From Octopus sinensis (lineage: Eukaryota): a stretch of DNA of 64,000 nt. The notes under the pieces were generated by a model. The model was given only the letters and a program-made list of their open reading frames with translations. It searched no databases and was not told the origin of the DNA. Every line of letters begins with the position of its first letter. Position 1 is the stretch's first letter. Both the position numbers and the translations under genes were made by a program. The stretch lies in the NCBI RefSeq assembly GCF_006345805.1, contig NC_043003.1, positions 68,200,001-68,264,000 on the forward strand, in the 5' to 3' direction. Positions 5,291 through 58,944 of the stretch are shown one piece after another.

Positions 5291-5474
5291 TTATTCTGGA
5301 TGGGTGTGATGGGCTCTTTGTTCGAAAATACAAAGGACACAGATATTGTCATATAGCCTGCTGGAAACGATGTTTGTTGGGGTTAAATAACATTAACTAT
5401 CGCCCCATGCAGGGCAGCCACATTGTGTCGGAAAATAGTCTTTAATTTATATATGTGTGTGTGTGCGTGTGAGT

Positions 5475-5511
<37 letters not shown>

Positions 5512-5526
5512 GGTGCGTGTGCGAGT

Positions 5527-5778
5527 GTGGAGGCGCGTGGCTTAGTGGTTAGGGTGCCAGCATCATGATCGTAAGATTGCGGTTTAGGGTCCTGGACCGG
5601 GAGACGCATCGTGTTCTTGAGCAAAGCAGTTCCTTTCACGTTGCTCCAGTCCACTCAGCTGGCAAAAATGAGTAACGCTGCGATGGACTGGCGGCCCGTC
5701 CACCTGGGGAACACATACGCCAAAGAAACCTGGAAACCGGGCCCATGAGACTGGCTAGGCTTTAAAAGGGCGCATTTA
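5527..5778 (+). mobile_element. tRNA-type SINE family B (Meta-SINE-like core), monomer
   Basis: A-box-like tggcttagtgg and a degenerate B box, followed by gtgttcttgagcaaa..gctgcgatggactggcg..gaaaccggg; same family as the 48055-49341 array. Confidence 0.85.
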
Positions 5779-5997
5779 TATAAATAAAATCCTTATATGT
5801 AAATTTTACAAATATTATAATAATTATATATATTATTATAACAAGGGATTGGAATTATGCCTCTCCATGCGCTGAAAATAGACACCAAATGACGGCAGAA
5901 ACACCTTAAGAACTAAAAAAAAATACACATGTTGTAATCAAGCAAAAAGAAGATAATGAATTAAACTTTTGGTTAAACGTGTACAAGATCTCGTCTC

Positions 5998-6153
5998 AAG
6001 CTTAAGGTAAAAATTTATACCTACTGCTATCTTCAGCAACGTTATTCCGTAGTATAAAATTACAAGTATTTACAGATACGTTCAATTGTAAATTTATACT
6101 ACAGAATAACGGTGTTGAAGATAATAGCAGGTATAAATTTTTACCTTAAGCTT
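5998..6153. repeat. Fold-back hairpin / MITE-like element, 68-bp arms with 20-nt spacer
   Basis: aagcttaaggtaaaaatttatacct.. (5998-6065) versus ..aggtataaatttttaccttaagctt (6086-6153). Confidence 0.85.
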
Positions 6154-6447
6154 CGGCTCAAGATCGAAAGGTCGTGAGTTCAATTCCCTGTGACGCATTG
6201 TGTCCTTCAGCAAGATACTTTATTTCACGTTGCTCTAGCTCACGCGACTGGCAAAAATGAGTAGTGCCTGTATTTCAAAGGGCCGGCCTTGTCACACTCT
6301 GTGTCACTCTGTATCGCCCTGAGAAGTATGTTATGGGTATTCGTGTCTGTGGAGTGCTCAGCCACATACACGTTAATTTCATGAGCATGCAGTTCCGTTG
6401 ATCGGATCAGCTGGGATCCTGGTCGTCGTGACCGACGGAGTGCTCCA
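6153..6447 (+). mobile_element. 5'-truncated tRNA-type SINE family C
   Basis: ggtcgtgagttcaattcc B-box region; core shared with family B (tgtgtcctt..tttcacgttgct..ggcaaaaatgagta); distinct 3' tail. Confidence 0.75.
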
Positions 6448-25368: not shown

Positions 25369-25754
25369 ATATATATACGATCATGTACCAGGCTCAAATA
25401 CATTATAGAATTCTGCGAAAAGTATTAGGGTTTTGTTTTTAAAAATCATTTAGGAAATCGACCTGTCATATTTATCGATATAGCGCCTTATGATTTTCAT
25501 GTATTAATATGTCCGCTTCACATTTTTTAGACACATTATAGATTTACTACGTTTCTCGCTCGAAGTAAAATGGAAGCGAAATGAAAATTCTCTTTTATTC
25601 TTAAATGATATTCGCTTTTATATTAAACCGTGAGCTTAAATGATGAAACATCATGAGGAAGAAATTTTGTACTGCTTCAGTTGTCTTAGATAACAATTGA
25701 ATAGTGTGACTGTAGAATATTCAAGAAAGAAAAGGCTTCGTCGACGTGAACGAA

Positions 25755-26272
25755 GAAGAAGAAGAAGAAGAAGAGGAAGAAAAAGAAGGAGAAGAAGAAG
25801 AAGAAGAGAAGAAGAAGAAGAGGAAGAAAAGGAGGAGGAAGGAAAAGGGAGCAGAAGAAGAAGAAGAAGAGAAGAAGAAGAAGAGGAAGAAGGGGATGAG
25901 GAAGGAGAGGTGGAGAAGAAGAAGAAGATAAAGTAGAGGAAGAGGGAAGAAGGAGAAGAAAAAGTAGAGGAAGAGGGAAGAAGGGGATGAGGAAGGAGAG
26001 GGGGAGAAGAAGAAGAAAAAGAAAAAGTAGAGAAAGAGGGAAGAAGGGATGAGGAAGGAGAGGTGGAGAAGAAGAAGAAGATAAAGTAGAGGAAGAGGGA
26101 AGAAGGAGAAGAAAAAGTAGAGGAAGAGGGAAGAAGGGGATGAGGAAGGAGAGGGAGAGAAGAAGAAGAAGAAGAAGAAGAAGAAGAAGAAGAAGAAATG
26201 AAAAATAGAGGAAGAGGGAAGAAAAGGAGGAGGAAGGAAAAGGGAGCAGAAGAAGAAGAAGAAGAAGAAGAA
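25755..26272. repeat. Polypurine (GAA/GAG) tract with higher-order repeats
   Basis: Nearly all A/G; block gatgaggaaggagaggtggagaagaagaagaagataaagtagagg recurs about 155 bp apart. Confidence 0.9.
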
Positions 26273-27278
26273 GGATATTGAAGACGTATTTACATTCCCA
26301 ATCACGCACACTCAAACACACTCACATATATACAGCCACACGCACATATATACATACACACATCACACACATAAGGATATATACAATTGCACATATAATC
26401 ATACACACAGAATGCTTCAAATATACTTATATATGTGTGTGTGTGTGCGTATGCTTGTGTGCGTGTAAACTCATATATGTACATGAACACAGCACGTAAT
26501 CACATATATACGTATACATATATACAGAGACGTGTTTGTATATGTGTTTGCTCATTGTGTGTATGAATGTGTGTGTGTGTGTGTGTGTGTGTGTTCATGT
26601 GTATGGAAGCACTGTATCTCAGTTAAACTACGTAAATAGCTATTTTGCTCCGCTGTTACCTAAAGCGCTCCATTCAATAAATGGCAACGGAGGCAACTGT
26701 CTGATGTCAATGTAATTACTTCCCATTCTGTAGAGAATACGACTGATTGCTAAATCTATTGTCGGTTGTTTGCTAGTTTTATTTTATGTGCACATTTTAT
26801 CGATAATAATCATATCTACCTGATTATGCAATATGATAAATTAGATCGCGCTGTTTGAGGTATTGCCTTGTTTTTAGTCTTGTATTAGTACATATGCTAT
26901 GTTGTTCATGTTCTTTTTGTCGATACAACAGCCAGGAAATGAGTTGATGGTCGCGCCACCTACTAAATATAAGGTTGACATTGGTATTACTTATATACCA
27001 CTATAACGATGTACTACATTCTTATATAAGTATCACCTGAAAATGAATGTGATTTTTCAAAAGTGTCGGTTCCATCCCATCTTTTCTGGGGGAGCCCAGC
27101 AAACAATTGCGTAGGATGCATCAGGCCATGGATGTGTATGAAATCAGTTCCCTTGGCAACCATACCGCTTTGCGTTTAGACCGAAATAAGCAGCATATTG
27201 GGCAATTAAATTCTGCCGTAATCTCAGTTTCACCAAGAAATTCTAATTGAACTTTGATGTGTGTGTGTGCGTGTGTAT

Positions 27279-29980: not shown

Positions 29981-30032
<52 letters not shown>

Positions 30033-30034
<2 letters not shown>

Positions 30035-30153
30035 GTCAGCATCATGATCGTAAGATTGTGGTTTTCGTTCCAGGACCGGGCGACGCGTTGTCTTCTTGAG
30101 CAAAACACTTCATTTCATGAGTAACGCTGCGATGGACTGGTGGCGCATTTATT
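30033..30153 (+). mobile_element. Internally deleted SINE family B
   Basis: catcatgatcgtaagattgtggtt..gcgacgcgttg..gagtaacgctgcgatggactgg. Confidence 0.8.
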
Positions 30154-30155
30154 AT

Positions 30156-30460
30156 GTGGGGGTGCAATGGCCCAGTGGTTAAGGCAGCACACTCGCGGTC
30201 GAGGGATCGCCGCTTCGATTCCCAGACCGGGTGTTTTGTATATTTATTGAGCGAAAACATCTTAAAGCTCCAGGAGGCTCCGACAAGGGGTGGTGCCGAA
30301 AACTGTTGTACTCTTTCGCCACAACTTTCTCTCAGTCTCTCTTGGTGTTTCTTGAGTAATGCTGCAATGGACTGGCGTCTCATCCAGCCGGGGGAAATAC
30401 ATACGCCACGGAAACCGGGAAACCGGGCCCATGAGCCTGGGTAGGCTTGAAAAGGGCGAC
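30156..30460 (+). mobile_element. SINE with a different tRNA head and body but a family B 3' tail
   Basis: Head gcaatggcccagtggttaaggcagc..ttcgattccc; tail gctgcaatggactggcg..gaaaccgggaaaccgggcccatgagcctgg. Confidence 0.8.
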
Positions 30461-31664
30461 GTTTTCTTAATCAATTTTTATGTAAATATATACGCATATG
30501 TGTATATCATATCTATGTGTACATAAATATTTATATGTATATATGTATATATATACGTACACATGTACGTATGCATATATGTATATAACTGTGTGTGTGC
30601 TTGCGTGAGAGTTTGCGTGGGTGTGCGTGTGCGTGTGCGTGTTTGTGTGTGTTTGCACACACATACATTCAAAGAGGTTTGCGGCCTCCTTGTTCTTCAT
30701 CTTTATCAATAGCATTCCTGATTGTCCATGCCTCACTTCTGCCGTTGTGGATCTGCATTGTTTGAAGCAATGGGTGAAAGTTGCAAGTTACCGTCCACTT
30801 CCGACTGGTTAGGTCTGCATATGCCACCATCATCTTTCGCTATAGCACTTTCAGAAACTGGAATGGCAAATGATGTCACCATAATCAGACGTTTTCATGC
30901 CATTAACCTATAGTGATAAACCCTTGTAGAACACGAGTCCCGCTCTCTGAGTCCATGATATTAGTAACTATTGGTACGCGGAAGTTAGATGGCTAGTAAT
31001 CACGTGAAATCACAGAGTTTACATCCGCTTAGGCGAAAAATAAGAATTGGAAGAAAAAACAGATTAGGTGAAAAACAGGTGAAATTACGTAGATATGAAA
31101 GTCACTTTGTTTATGCGGTTGAGTTCTTGTTTATATTATTTCATAACATTGGCCTCTTTTATTCGTAAGTTGCCAGTGTTCTGTAGAGTAGCTTTTCGAG
31201 AACGAATTAAAAGTGTATGATAACATGTAAAATGCAATGTTAAGCTTGATAATGAAATGTTTCAGAATGCAAAAAAGCCGAGTTTTAATCGACTACTAAA
31301 TTGTGATGACGTTTATGGGCATAAATTTAAAATAATGTAAAATTTATTATATCATTTGATCGACGATCTCTTTTGCCCTAACGGTTGTCTTGTTAAACGT
31401 GGGAAAAAAAACTTCATTTATAATTTAAGTGAACGTGAATGCCAAGTAGAATCTAATCAACCGGACAACAGCACACAACTACATTAGCTCTTTAAAGGAA
31501 AAGACGTTGTCACCACTCAAGAAATTACTGTAACGTTGACTCATTTAACGTAGTTGAGTTCCACACATGTTGCTTTGAGTGAGGTCTCGTTGTGGTTATT
31601 CTGTAGTAATAATAACAGTGGTCAACAAAATGATACTTTTTTAATCATCAGAGATACTGATTGA

Positions 31665-47500: not shown

Positions 47501-47571
47501 TGGAATTCAGTACTCTGACCAAGCGAATTCGTAATAAGTTGTTACTTTGAAAATTTATATATATAAACCCG

Positions 47572-47898
47572 ACAAGATTCTTTCAGTTTCCGATTAACAA
47601 ATCGACTCACAAGGCTATGGTTGTCCTGAGGCTATACTAGTATACACTTGCCCAAGTTATACGCAATAGTACCGAACCCGAAACCATGTGGTTGAGAGGC
47701 ACACTTGTTACCACGCATCTAACCCTGGGCTATATATACATATATATATATATATATAGTACTGGAGTGGTTTCTTTCCACGTAACAAATCCCTTCACAA
47801 GGCTTTGGTCATCTTGGCTTTTTAGTTGAAGAAACTTGCCCAAGATGCCATCAATAACTAATTGGTTGGGAAGCAAACGTCTTACTACACAGCTGGTT
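47572..47898 (-). mobile_element. Two degenerate SINE family A heads
   Basis: ttctttcagtttcc..tcacaaggct..cttgcccaag..ccatgtggttg, twice. Confidence 0.7.
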
Positions 47899-48054
47899 TT
47901 GTGCCTTAAATGTATAGGTAGCAATAAACGCTACGTTCACATAGAGTAGAGATATTGTGTCTAAAAGTACAGAATCAAATGGAGTCGTTTAATTATGCGT
48001 TTCGTACATATTGACTATATTGTTCAGCATTGTTCTCAAGTACTAGTTAAGCAC

Positions 48055-49341
48055 GTGGAGGCGGGTGGCCTAGTGGTTAGAATGTCATAACCATGATCGT
48101 AAGATTGTGGTTTCGATTCCTGGACCTGGCGACGCGTTGTGTTCTTGAGGAAAACATTTCATTTCACGTTGCTCCAGACCACTCAGCTGGCAAAAATGAG
48201 TAACGCTGTGATCGACTGGCGCCCCATCCAGCTGGGAAACACATACGCTATAGAAACCGGGAAACCGGACCCATGTGCCTTGCTAGGCTTGAAAAAGAGC
48301 GCATTTATTTTTGTGGAGGCACATGGCTTAGTGGCTAAGGTGTCAGCACCATGATAGTAAGATTGTGGTTTCGATTCCTGGACCTGGCGACGCTTTGTGT
48401 TCTTGAGCAAAACACTTCATTTCACGTTGCTCCAGTCCACTCAGCTGGCAAAAATGAGTAACGATGAGATCGACTGGCGCCCCATTCAGCTGGGAAACGC
48501 ATACGGCATAGAAACCGGGAAACCGGGCCCATGTGCCTTGCTAGGCTTGAAAAAGAGCGCATTTATTTTTGTGGAGGCACGTGGCTTAGTGGCTAGGATG
48601 TCAGTACCATGATAGTAAGATTGTGGTTTCGATTCCTGGACCTGGCGACGCGTTGTGTTCTTGAGCAAAACACTTCATTTCACGTTGCTCCAGTCCACTC
48701 AGCTGGCAAAAATGAGTAACGATGAGATCGACTGGCGCCCCATTCAGCTGGGAAACACATACGGCATAGAAACCGGGAAACCGGGCCCATGTGCCTTGCT
48801 AGGCTTGAAAAAGAGCACATTTATTTTTGTGGAGCCACGTGGCTTAGTGGCTAGGATGTCAGTACCATGATAGTAAGATTGTGGTTTCGATTCCTGGACC
48901 TGGCGACGCGTTGTGTTCTTGAGCAAAACACTTCATTTCACGTTGCTCCAGTCCACTCAGCTGGCAAAAATGAGTAACGATGAGATCGACTGGCGCCCCA
49001 TTCAGCTGCGAAACACATACGGCATAGAAACCGGGAAACCGGGCCCATGTGCCTTGCTAGGCTTGAAAAAGACGCATTTATTTTTGTGGAGGCACATGGC
49101 TTAGTGACTAAGGTGTCAGCACCATGATAGTAAGATTGTGGTTTCGATTCCTGGACCTGGCGACGCGTTGTGTTCTTGAGCAAACACTTCATTTCACGTT
49201 GCTCCAGTCCACTCAGCTGGCAAAAATGAGTAACGCTGAGATCGACTGGCGCTCCATCCAGCTGGGAAACACATATGGTATAGAAACCGGGAAATTGGGC
49301 CCATGTGCCTTGCTAGGCTTGAAAAGGGGCACATGTAATTT
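48055..49341 (+). mobile_element. Five-unit head-to-tail array of SINE family B, 258-bp period
   Basis: Units start at 48055, 48313, 48571, 48829 and 49086; flanked by tactagttaagcac at 48041-48054 and 49342-49355. Confidence 0.95.
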
Positions 49342-49466
49342 TACTAGTTAAGCACACATCTAGACAATATTTTCTTCTGAAGCTTATCAGTCACCAAATA
49401 GTTCGTTTCGCAGTGATCCTGTAGACATGGGTATCTGTTTGTATGTGCTTTGTTTGTGTGTGTGTG

Positions 49467-49564
<98 letters not shown>

Positions 49565-49770
49565 GTGATGGGGTCTCTATATTTTGTAGAAAGGTTTGAA
49601 ATATCCTTCAAGCAAGATTTGTTTACATTCGGATTATTTCGGTATTTAACAGAAAACATAACTATATTAACTGGCAGCAGGTGAAAGGAAACATGTTTAC
49701 ACTGGAAGAATGAAAGTGTATTAGTAATTTTCCGAAATAATAACAAACACAGCAACGCAAATTTAGAAGC

Positions 49771-50055: not shown

Positions 50056-50399
50056 TTATCAATGTCATAGGTAAAATAATATCGACGCCAACTATGTATT
50101 GCATTTTGAGAAGTTGTTTATGAAACGGCTTACAGTAAACAACTTTGAGAATGCTAAAATAAATTCTTTTTAACAAGAGCATACTTTATGAATATCAAAA
50201 TGTTATTTGTATTTCCACATTTTTATTTCCTGTAGAAATTATTATTCGAAACTCAAAATTAAGTAACAATATATGTATATTCGAATTTTTTTTATTGATA
50301 TTGTATTTTTCCTCTCACTTGCTCCACGTCACTCAACATATGTACGAGTATTAAATACAGAGAAATAAATACATGCATGCATACATGCAAGCATATATA

Positions 50400-50940
50400 G
50401 GCGAAGGAGTGTCTGTGTAATAAGTAGCTTGCTGAAGAACTACATGGTTCCGGGTTCAGTCCCACTGCGTGGCACCTTGGGCAAGTGTCATCTACTATAG
50501 CCTCGGGCCGTCCAAAGCCTTGTGAGTGGATTTGGTAGACGGAAACTATAGGCGTAGTAGTGGCTGTGTGGTAAGTTGCTTGCTTACGAAGCACATGGTT
50601 CTGGGTTCAGTCCCACAGCGTGGTACCTTGGGAAAGATTGTTCTACTATCGGATCGGGCCGACCAAAGACTTGTGAGTGGATTTGGTAGACGGAAACAGA
50701 AAGAAGCCCGTCGTATATATGTACATATATATGTATGTGTGTGTATAGGTTTGTGTTTGTCCCGCCATCATTGCTTGACAACCAATGCTGGTGTGTTTAG
50801 CGGTTCGGCACAATAGACCGATAGAATAAGCACTAGGCTTCCAAAGAATAAGTCCTGGGGTCGATTTGCTCGACTAAAGGCGGTGCTCCAGTATGGCCAC
50901 AGTCAAATGACTGAAACAGGTAAAAGAGTAAAAGAGTACA
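50400..50940 (+). mobile_element. SINE family A with duplicated head
   Basis: Head 1 at ~50400-50548 and head 2 from ~50549, followed by the middle and the tail ..ggcggtgctccagtatggccacagtcaaatgactgaaac. Confidence 0.9.

Positions 50941-57939: not shown

Positions 57940-58944
<1,005 letters not shown>

What the first reader, a model, noticed from the sequence alone, without database searches (positions are those of the whole stretch)
48041..49355. SINE pentamer bracketed by a single 14-bp target-site duplication
Seen: five full 258-bp units joined directly (..gcatttattttt|gtggag..). The TSD tactagttaagcac occurs only outside the array, not between units. All units share variants absent from the monomer at 5527 (gatcgactggcgc, atgtgccttgctagg). 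Units 2-4 share extra variants (gatgag, cattcag), while units 1 and 5 differ. Known: TPRT makes one TSD per event, and unequal exchange through TSDs would leave TSD copies between units. Inference: a multimer inserted in one event (concatemeric or circular template, or RT re-initiation) and the middle then expanded or homogenised. This is a SINE caught turning into a satellite, with five Pol III promoters in tandem.
Basis: partly seen in the sequence, partly recalled or inferred. Interest (0 to 1): 0.8.

Follow-up and report, generated by a model that had tools for sequence, protein, structure and literature searches.

The report
SINE dimer expanded to five tandem units
Five full-length copies of a short retroposon sit head-to-tail inside one 14-bp target-site duplication, but their variants show the three middle copies arose on the spot by unequal crossing-over from a two-copy seed, which is a tidy example of a known process.

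Summary
Positions 48055-49341 hold five complete units (258, 258, 258, 257 and 256 bp) joined tail to head with nothing between them. They are bracketed by TACTAGTTAAGCAC, which occurs only at those two places in the window.

The unit is a CORE-type SINE with A-box and B-box motifs and a T5 run at its end. No tRNA or ribozyme model matches it.

A one-step pentamer insertion is not needed.
- Units 2-4 are hybrids. Their 5' part carries derived states of unit 5 (positions 9, 23, 44, 194). Their 3' end carries derived states of unit 1 (positions 242, 244). Permutation p = 0.005.
- This is the recombinant expected from unequal crossing-over in a [U1][U5] dimer.
- Unit 2 shows a second mosaic (p = 0.0016).

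So a dimer with a flush junction and one TSD was the seed, and the rest grew in place. How the dimer formed cannot be decided here. The candidates are an RT template jump, a second insertion into the first copy's tail, or a dimeric source.

Full-length SINE multimers and TSD-(SINE)n-TSD arrays are already described. I rate this a new member of a known kind, of modest interest.

The parts
48041..48054 (+). Left copy of the 14-bp target-site duplication, TACTAGTTAAGCAC.
   Evidence: It is one of only two exact occurrences in the window on either strand. It is flush with the first base of unit 1.
48055..48312 (+). Unit 1 (258 bp), the edge unit of the 'U1 type'.
   Evidence: It keeps ancestral states G9, T23, C44 and C194, which it shares with the outgroup copies. 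It has about 10 private changes, mostly in the 5' part. It shares derived A242 and A244 and the T5 tail with units 2-4. Its A box is TGGCCTAGTGG.
48313..48570 (+). Unit 2 (258 bp), a hybrid unit with a second mosaic.
   Evidence: Its first 35 nt match unit 5 (A11, A26, G28, C35) and the rest matches units 3 and 4 (max-chi-square permutation p = 0.0016). It has two private changes.
48571..48828 (+). Unit 3 (258 bp), a hybrid middle unit.
   Evidence: It is 98.4% identical to unit 4, with a 173-nt exact shared run. Its 5' part is unit-5 type and its 3' end is unit-1 type. Motifs are the A box at 12-22 (TGGCTTAGTGG), a B-box-like GGTTTCGATTCC at 55-66, and T5 at the end.
48829..49085 (+). Unit 4 (257 bp), a hybrid middle unit.
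   Evidence: It has three private changes (C7, C181, 1-nt deletion at 245) and is otherwise the same as unit 3.
49086..49341 (+). Unit 5 (256 bp), the edge unit of the 'U5 type'.
   Evidence: It shares derived A9, C23, A44 and G194 with units 2-4. It keeps ancestral G242 and G244. It has about 9 private changes, mostly in the 3' part, and a variant tail CACATGTAATTT.
49342..49355 (+). Right copy of the 14-bp target-site duplication.
   Evidence: It is identical to 48041-48054. The start-to-start spacing is 1301 bp, which is 1287 + 14.
5527..5781 (+). Solitary older copy of the same family, used as an outgroup.
   Evidence: It is 84-86% identical to the units over the full length. It has different flanks and lacks the 14-mer.
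30034..30462 (+). A second flush tail-to-head SINE junction in the window.
   Evidence: A 5'-truncated, internally deleted family copy (30034-30152) ends in GCGCATTTATTAT. It is followed directly by GTGGGGG..., a SINE with a different head (30154-30462) whose last ~100 nt are 80-85% identical to the unit's 3' part.

Best explanation
A CORE-type SINE entered this site as a head-to-tail dimer [U1 type][U5 type], with a flush junction and one 14-bp target-site duplication made by target-primed reverse transcription. Unequal crossing-over between the misaligned units then produced a hybrid unit (5' part of U5, 3' end of U1) lying between the two parents. Further unequal exchange or conversion multiplied and reshuffled that hybrid into units 2, 3 and 4. 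The two edge units were left out of the homogenisation and kept their private changes.

**Shown.** The array, the single TSD, the complete units, the identical junctions, and the hybrid and mosaic structure of the middle units.

**Inferred.** How the seed dimer formed. I judge the most likely route to be an end-to-end template jump of the partner reverse transcriptase. It would jump from the 5' end of the first SINE RNA (now unit 5) to the 3' end of a second SINE RNA (now unit 1) within one insertion event. I put that sub-step at about 0.35-0.4.
For: - **Array and junctions.** Five units are joined flush, and all four junctions read CATTTATTTTT|GTGGAG.
- **TSD.** One exact 14-bp repeat lies only outside the array and is unique in the window.
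- **Unit ends match a Pol III transcript.** The start lies 11 nt upstream of an exact A-box match, and units 1-4 end in T5.
- **Polarised variants.** Derived states at 9, 23, 44 and 194 are shared by units 2-5 but not unit 1. Derived states at 242 and 244 are shared by units 1-4 but not unit 5. These two groupings cannot both be clades on a tree without recombination.
- **Position of the matches.** Sites where the middle units match unit 5 lie 5' of sites where they match unit 1 (Mann-Whitney p = 0.0019; max-chi-square permutation p = 0.005).
- **Direction.** This is the recombinant expected from a [U1][U5] dimer.
- **Second exchange.** Unit 2 shows a second breakpoint between positions 35 and 97 (p = 0.0016).
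- **Private changes.** Unit 1 has about 10, unit 5 about 9, and units 2, 3 and 4 have 2, 0-1 and 3. Diverged edges around a homogenised middle is the usual pattern for arrays that evolve by unequal exchange (established knowledge).
- **A second flush SINE-SINE junction** lies at 30152|30154.
- **Literature.** End-to-end template jumping is a documented activity of non-LTR reverse transcriptases (R2; cited in PMC2881922, and see PMC8594491). Template switching is the standard explanation for composite SINEs (PMC4758252).
Against: - Polarisation rests on only one to three old outgroup copies (84-86% identical), and only six polarised sites carry the hybrid argument.
- One site (195) needs a parallel change.
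- The mosaic could have evolved at a source array elsewhere and been copied here whole.
- The intact TSD has no power to date the insertion against the 11% divergence between units 1 and 5. About 1.6 differences would be expected in 14 bp, so P(0) is about 0.2.
- Nothing here separates a template jump from a second insertion into the first copy's tail, or from a dimeric master copy.
- No other genomic copies could be retrieved.
- Unit number was not checked against reads.
Confidence: 0.6

Rival explanations
1. Two separate insertions made the seed dimer. A resident monomer, which owns the 14-bp TSD, received a second copy of the same family exactly in its T-rich tail. The bottom strand of that tail is perfectly complementary to the U-rich 3' end of an incoming SINE RNA and would prime reverse transcription. 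The second TSD would consist of tail bases and so be invisible. Expansion in place followed, as in the best explanation.
For: - Head-to-tail SINE pairs formed through tails are very common in mammals: about 40% of B2 and 49% of Dip copies, with multimers of up to eight units. The authors there leave open whether they arise by tail insertion or from dimeric templates (PMC8466645).
- The junction lies within a T5 run, which could hide a short T-only TSD.
- Two of the three family loci in this window carry a flush tail-to-head junction, as expected if tails are preferred targets.
Against: - The visible TSD shows a 14-nt stagger at this site. A similar stagger in the tail would leave a duplicated tail segment, and none is seen.
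- If the tail itself served as the TSD, the junction tail and the final tail should start out identical. They differ at 3-4 of 14 positions (GCGCATTTATTTTT against GCACATGTAATTT). This is weak evidence (P about 0.2 at 11% divergence).
- The heterodimer at 30152|30154 also has unlike tails.
- No target preference of the unknown partner element is known.
Confidence: 0.2
2. The whole multimer (three to five units, or a dimer from a dimeric master copy) was copied by retroposition from an array that already existed elsewhere. The transcript would have started at the first unit's start site and ended at the last unit's terminator. The mosaic structure evolved at the source locus.
For: - The array has a whole number of units in natural phase with a single TSD.
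- Dimeric SINEs that move as dimers are known, for example Alu (PMC10702118 discussion).
- The TSD is perfectly intact although units 1 and 5 differ by 11%. That is easier to explain if the divergence predates the insertion.
Against: - Units 1-4 each end in T5, a Pol III terminator-like run. A Pol III transcript would have to read through up to four of them.
- The pattern of diverged edge units around a homogenised middle is what in-place evolution predicts, and here the edges coincide with the TSD.
- No second multimer of this family is in the window.
- This explanation only moves the question of how the first dimer arose to another locus.
Confidence: 0.15
3. A rolling-circle copy of a circular RNA, as proposed for retrozymes, gave a concatemer that was inserted in one event.
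For: Animal non-LTR retrozymes are tandem arrays of roughly 300-bp units, from dimers to large multimers, sometimes with TSDs longer than 4 bp. They occur in molluscs (PMC7229834).
Against: - No hammerhead or other ribozyme model matches at E <= 10, even when one unit is searched alone.
- There is no CUGANGA box on either strand.
- The array starts and ends exactly at the natural unit ends. For a rolling-circle product that needs a roughly 1-in-258 coincidence at the 5' end.
- The units were not identical, and they show a two-parent hybrid structure.
Confidence: 0.03
4. Assembly artefact: the true locus has fewer units, and the assembler expanded a repeat.
For: Tandem repeats are prone to miscounting. 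Units 3 and 4 share a 173-nt exact run. Reads were not available.
Against: - Every unit has its own differences. Artefactual expansion would give identical copies.
- The window carries many long microsatellites and a 99%-identical 456-bp tandem repeat assembled through. That suggests long reads, which would span 1.3 kb (inference).
Confidence: 0.03

Closest known systems
Full-length head-to-tail SINE multimers in mammals (B2, B1, Dip, Ves; PMC8466645, PMC10702118)
   Same: Complete SINE units are joined tail to head, with up to eight units in jerboa. The open question there (insertion into a tail, or a dimeric template) is the same one left open here.
   Different: Those junctions run through A-rich tails, which are L1 endonuclease targets. 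Here the junction is a T5 terminator run with no A-tail. The middle units here can be shown to be in-place recombinants.
TSD1-(SINE)n-TSD1 arrays in the blood clam Scapharca broughtonii (PMC11481361)
   Same: It is a mollusc, the SINEs are tRNA-related with a conserved central domain, the arrays have 4-15 units, and a single TSD pair lies outside the array.
   Different: There the first unit lacks its tail, the inner units are truncated at both ends and only the last unit has a complete tail. That is an internal segment duplicated in place. Here every unit is complete, so the first junction cannot come from an internal duplication.
SINE-derived satellites of squamate reptiles (PMC10702118)
   Same: Tandem repeats arise from SINE sequence. 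Short loci have variable units, and homogenisation increases with array length.
   Different: Those units are portions of a SINE with one longer terminal unit. The arrays reach about 1000 units at many loci, often subtelomeric. Here there are five complete units at one locus.
Animal non-LTR retrozymes (PMC7229834; bioRxiv 10.64898/2026.07.22.740005)
   Same: The unit size (about 300 bp), tandem arrangement, occasional long TSDs and presence in molluscs all match.
   Different: Retrozymes are defined by a type I hammerhead ribozyme in each unit. None is present here. This unit has Pol III A-box and B-box motifs and a CORE domain instead.
CORE-SINEs (MIR; octopus OR1/OR2 as cited in PMC4824008 and PMC4758252)
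   Same: Unit positions 3-144 align collinearly with the head and CORE domain of the MIR consensus.
   Different: Identity with the named octopus families could not be checked because no reference sequence was available. The source organism is not established; its cephalopod look is my own impression.

Membership tests
SINE (Pol III-type, tRNA-related) | Internal Pol III promoter with A and B boxes at tRNA-like spacing. | tested here: met
   TGGCTTAGTGG at 12-22 matches TRGCNNAGTGG exactly in units 2-4. Units 1 and 5 differ from them at one base each; only unit 5's change breaks the consensus. GGTTTCGATTCC at 55-66 matches GGTTCGANNCC with one extra T in all five units. This is a motif match only; transcription was not tested.
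SINE (Pol III-type, tRNA-related) | A head recognisably derived from a tRNA. | tested here: inconclusive
   ARAGORN finds no tRNA in the window. Rfam gives no tRNA match at E <= 10, even for one unit searched alone. The head does align with the tRNA-derived head of MIR.
SINE (Pol III-type, tRNA-related) | Short, non-coding, dispersed copies in unrelated flanks, with target-site duplications of variable length. | tested here: met
   The unit is 258 bp. Copies lie at 5527 and 30034 in different flanks. A 14-bp TSD surrounds the array. No TSD is detectable around the older copies.
SINE (Pol III-type, tRNA-related) | A 3' region shared with a partner LINE. | not testable with these tools
   The window contains no LINE or reverse-transcriptase ORF, and no eukaryotic genome collection was available. 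A second SINE with a different head shares the last ~100 nt, which fits a common partner.
CORE-SINE superfamily | The conserved CORE central domain downstream of the head. | tested here: met
   The local alignment to MIR scores 31, against 11.3 +/- 1.8 for shuffles (0 of 500 reach it).
Non-LTR retrozyme | A type I hammerhead ribozyme in every tandem unit. | tested here: not met
   No Rfam ribozyme family matches at E <= 10. There is no CUGANGA box on either strand.
Non-LTR retrozyme | Expression as unit-length circular RNA. | not testable with these tools
   No transcriptome data were available.
Satellite DNA / SINE-derived satellite | Long arrays at many loci, homogenised within and between loci. 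| tested here: not met
   There are five units at one locus in 64 kb. The genome-wide state is unknown.
Clam-type TSD1-(SINE)n-TSD1 array (internal duplication) | Inner units truncated at both head and tail. | tested here: not met
   All inner junctions consist of the complete tail plus the complete head, equal to the outer ends of the array.
Array expanded by unequal exchange through TSDs, TSD1-(SINE-TSD1)n | A copy of the TSD between units. | tested here: not met
   The 14-mer occurs only at 48041 and 49342.

The most novel reading that the evidence does not exclude
In this genome the reverse transcriptase that moves this SINE family (a LINE or a Penelope-like element) routinely strings complete Pol III transcripts together by end-to-end template jumping during a single insertion. 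Flush SINE dimers and heterodimers would then be a regular product. Two of the three family loci in this window have such a junction. These dimers would then seed tandem arrays by unequal exchange, giving a general and directly observable route from SINE to satellite.
Probability: 0.2. Interest if true: 0.55.

Novelty: new member of a known kind. Interest (0 to 1): 0.3.

Why it matters
The locus preserves each step of array birth. It shows an intact TSD, two diverged parental edge units, and middle units whose hybrid structure records the first unequal crossover. That makes it a clean teaching example and a useful anchor for a genome-wide census. It does not reveal a new mechanism. Full-length SINE multimers, single-TSD SINE arrays and SINE-derived satellites are already described. 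[quoted passage not shown]

Tried and rejected
- **Metagenome scan for a conserved 23-mer of the family.** It gave 0 hits.
- **Metagenome scan for the degenerate junction 22-mer.** It gave six hits. All are chance matches in unrelated DNA of 37-55% GC, five of them copies of one unrelated sequence, with no similarity beyond the pattern.
- **Protein-database search with a 71-aa spurious ORF spanning a unit junction.** The aim was to fish out other multimers. No homologue was found.
- **Search for a paralogous empty site for the flanks inside the window.** Only an unrelated SINE upstream and microsatellites matched.
- **Search for a partner LINE or any coding sequence.** All ORFs of 130 aa or more are low-complexity or microsatellite translations.
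- **Rfam and ARAGORN searches for tRNA and ribozymes.** Nothing was found.
- **A first stringent local alignment to MIR.** It was not significant. Only a more permissive scoring gave the long collinear match.
- **In-place exact duplication of a monomer.** Rejected, because there is no microhomology at the breakpoints and both breakpoints would have to fall exactly on the element ends.
- **Four successive insertions.** Rejected, because four flush events with identical T5 junctions are far less likely than one junction that was then copied.
- **Dating the insertion from the TSD.** Rejected as uninformative, since P(0 differences) is about 0.2.

Full report
**Observation**

Window 48055-49341 is a tandem array with a 258-bp period (TRF: 4.9 copies, 95% matches). 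The motif GTGGAG marks unit starts at 48055, 48313, 48571, 48829 and 49086. The units are 258, 258, 258, 257 and 256 bp long.

The four inner junctions all read ...CATTTATTTTT|GTGGAG..., with nothing between tail and head. The 14-mer TACTAGTTAAGCAC occurs exactly twice in the 64-kb window on either strand, at 48041-48054 and 49342-49355. Both copies are flush with the array, and their spacing is 1301 bp, which is 1287 + 14. A given 14-mer is expected about 5e-4 times by chance in 128 kb, so the bracket is real. The 14-mer is absent from the flanks of the solitary family copy at 5527-5781, so it is not part of the element.

**What the unit is**

- The unit has an exact A-box match (TGGCTTAGTGG, positions 12-22) and a B-box-like GGTTTCGATTCC (positions 55-66). 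The unit start lies 11 nt upstream of the A box, and units 1-4 end in T5. The unit boundaries are therefore those expected for a Pol III transcript.
- Positions 3-144 align collinearly with the head and CORE domain of the mammalian MIR consensus (score 31, against 11.3 +/- 1.8 for shuffles; 0 of 500 reach it). A stricter scoring was not significant. Octopus OR1/OR2 are cited as CORE-SINEs in PMC4824008 and PMC4758252.
- ARAGORN and Rfam do not recognise a tRNA in the unit, even when it is searched alone at E <= 10. The tRNA origin of the head is therefore not demonstrated.
- No ribozyme family matches, and no CUGANGA box exists on either strand.
- Other family members in the window:
  - a full-length older copy at 5527 (84-86% identical);
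  - a truncated copy at 30034-30152;
  - a related fragment at 6146-6286;
  - a SINE with a different head at 30154-30462 that shares the last ~100 nt.
- The window has no real coding ORF. Its AT-rich, microsatellite-dense, SINE-rich make-up looks cephalopod to me, but that is my own impression and was not tested.

**How the array formed**

Exchange through the TSD would leave TSD copies between units, and there are none. An in-place duplication of a monomer would need both breakpoints exactly on the element ends. No microhomology exists between ...AAGCAC|GTGGAG and ...ATTTTT|TACTAG. So the first tail-to-head junction came from the retroposition process itself. The question is how many units that process delivered.

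I polarised the variable sites with the outgroup copies.
- Four derived states (positions 9, 23, 44, 194) are shared by units 2-5 but not unit 1.
- Two derived states (positions 242, 244) are shared by units 1-4 but not unit 5.
- These two groupings overlap without nesting, which a tree without recombination cannot produce.

Across all 24 sites where units 1 and 5 differ, the middle units match unit 5 at 5' sites and unit 1 at 3' sites (Mann-Whitney p = 0.0019; max-chi-square permutation p = 0.005).

Unequal crossing-over in a dimer pairs U5 of one chromatid with U1 of the other. The product is U1-[5' U5 + 3' U1]-U5, which is the hybrid observed. It also explains why all four junctions are identical: they are copies of the single original U1-tail|U5-head junction.

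Unit 2 carries a second mosaic. Its first 35 nt are unit-5-like and the rest is unit-3-like (p = 0.0016), so at least one further exchange or conversion occurred.

Private changes number about 10 in unit 1 and about 9 in unit 5, but only 2, 0-1 and 3 in units 2, 3 and 4. Arrays that evolve by unequal exchange typically show diverged edges and a homogenised middle. A two-unit seed therefore suffices, and a one-step pentamer is not required.

**How the seed dimer formed (inferred)**

Three routes give a flush dimer with one visible TSD.

- **(a) Template jump.** The reverse transcriptase jumps end to end from the 5' end of one SINE RNA to the 3' end of another within one event. Non-LTR reverse transcriptases are known to do this (R2; cited in PMC2881922, and see PMC8594491). 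It is the usual explanation for composite SINEs (PMC4758252).
- **(b) Second insertion into the tail.** A second copy lands in the resident copy's T-rich tail, whose bottom strand would pair with the incoming RNA's U-rich end. This is the analogue of the tail insertions proposed to explain why 40-49% of B2 and Dip copies lie in multimers (PMC8466645).
- **(c) Dimeric master copy.**

The evidence bearing on these routes is limited.
- The junction tail and the final tail differ at 3-4 of 14 positions. This weakly disfavours the version of (b) in which the tail is the TSD.
- The T5 run between units disfavours Pol III read-through, which (c) needs.
- A second flush junction at 30152|30154, between two different SINE families, suggests that concatenation recurs in this genome.

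I favour (a), but the locus alone cannot decide.

A rolling-circle or circular template is unlikely. The array holds a whole number of units in natural phase, the units have two distinct parents, and there is no ribozyme.

The possibility that the whole array was copied from a source array cannot be excluded. The intact TSD has no dating power, because about 1.6 differences would be expected at the 11% divergence between units 1 and 5, giving P(0) of about 0.2.

**Comparison with what is known**

- Full-length SINE multimers of up to eight units are described in jerboa, and tandem B2/B1 pairs are abundant in mouse (PMC8466645; PMC10702118 discussion).
- In the blood clam, tRNA-related SINEs form arrays of 4-15 units of two types, TSD1-(SINE-TSD1)n and TSD1-(SINE)n-TSD1 (PMC11481361). 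In the second type the inner units are truncated at both ends, which means internal duplication. Here they are complete.
- SINE-derived satellites in squamates are built from portions of SINEs and reach about 1000 units (PMC10702118).
- Animal retrozymes resemble this array in unit size and arrangement but are defined by a hammerhead ribozyme (PMC7229834), which is absent here.

The locus is therefore a new member of a known kind. Its particular merit is that the order of events can be read from it.

**Limits**

No other genomic copies could be retrieved. Two metagenome scans and one protein search found nothing relevant, and no eukaryotic genome collection was available. Genome-wide frequency, subfamily structure, the orthologous empty site, read support and the partner element all remain untested.

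**Verdict**

A one-step pentamer, a circular template and 'turning into a satellite' are not supported or are overstated. Interest 0.3.

Noticed in passing
window 30034-30462: A 5'-truncated family copy with two internal deletions (unit positions ~113-142 and ~167-245 missing) ends in GCGCATTTATTAT. It is joined flush to a SINE with a different head (GTGGGGGTGCAATGGCCCAGTGG...) whose last ~100 nt are 80-85% identical to the 3' part of the array unit. So two head types share one 3' module, and this is a second flush tail-to-head junction.
   Followed up: partly
window 50396-50697: The 5' 151 bp of another tRNA-like SINE, of a different family, is duplicated in tandem (2.0 copies, 84% matches). 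Both copies begin with TATAGGCG. The normal continuation (AGAAAGAAGCCCGTCG...) follows only the second copy. This looks like an in-place internal duplication of the kind described in the blood clam.
   Followed up: partly
window 5454-5526 and 29984-30033: Both other family copies are immediately preceded by a (TG)n microsatellite, including the 5'-truncated one. The array itself has a (TG)n stretch 96 bp downstream (49451-49567). This could be coincidence, a target preference, or microsatellite birth at SINE 5' ends.
   Followed up: no
window 5998-6153: An inverted repeat with 68-nt arms (90% complementary, 20-nt spacer) lies directly upstream of a 5'-truncated related CORE-SINE fragment at 6146-6286.
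   Followed up: partly
window 57942-58893: A 456-bp unit is repeated 2.1 times at 99% identity. Each copy contains (TTA)n and (TTC)n microsatellites, so this is a very recent tandem duplication.
   Followed up: no
window 25752-26273: A GAA-rich stretch is organised as a 153-bp higher-order repeat (2.9-3.3 copies, 81-87% matches).
   Followed up: no
window 47550-47850: A reverse-oriented copy of the other SINE family (70-79% identical to 50438-50730) lies about 200 bp upstream of the array. The 200 bp immediately flanking the insertion on each side are unique in the window.
   Followed up: partly
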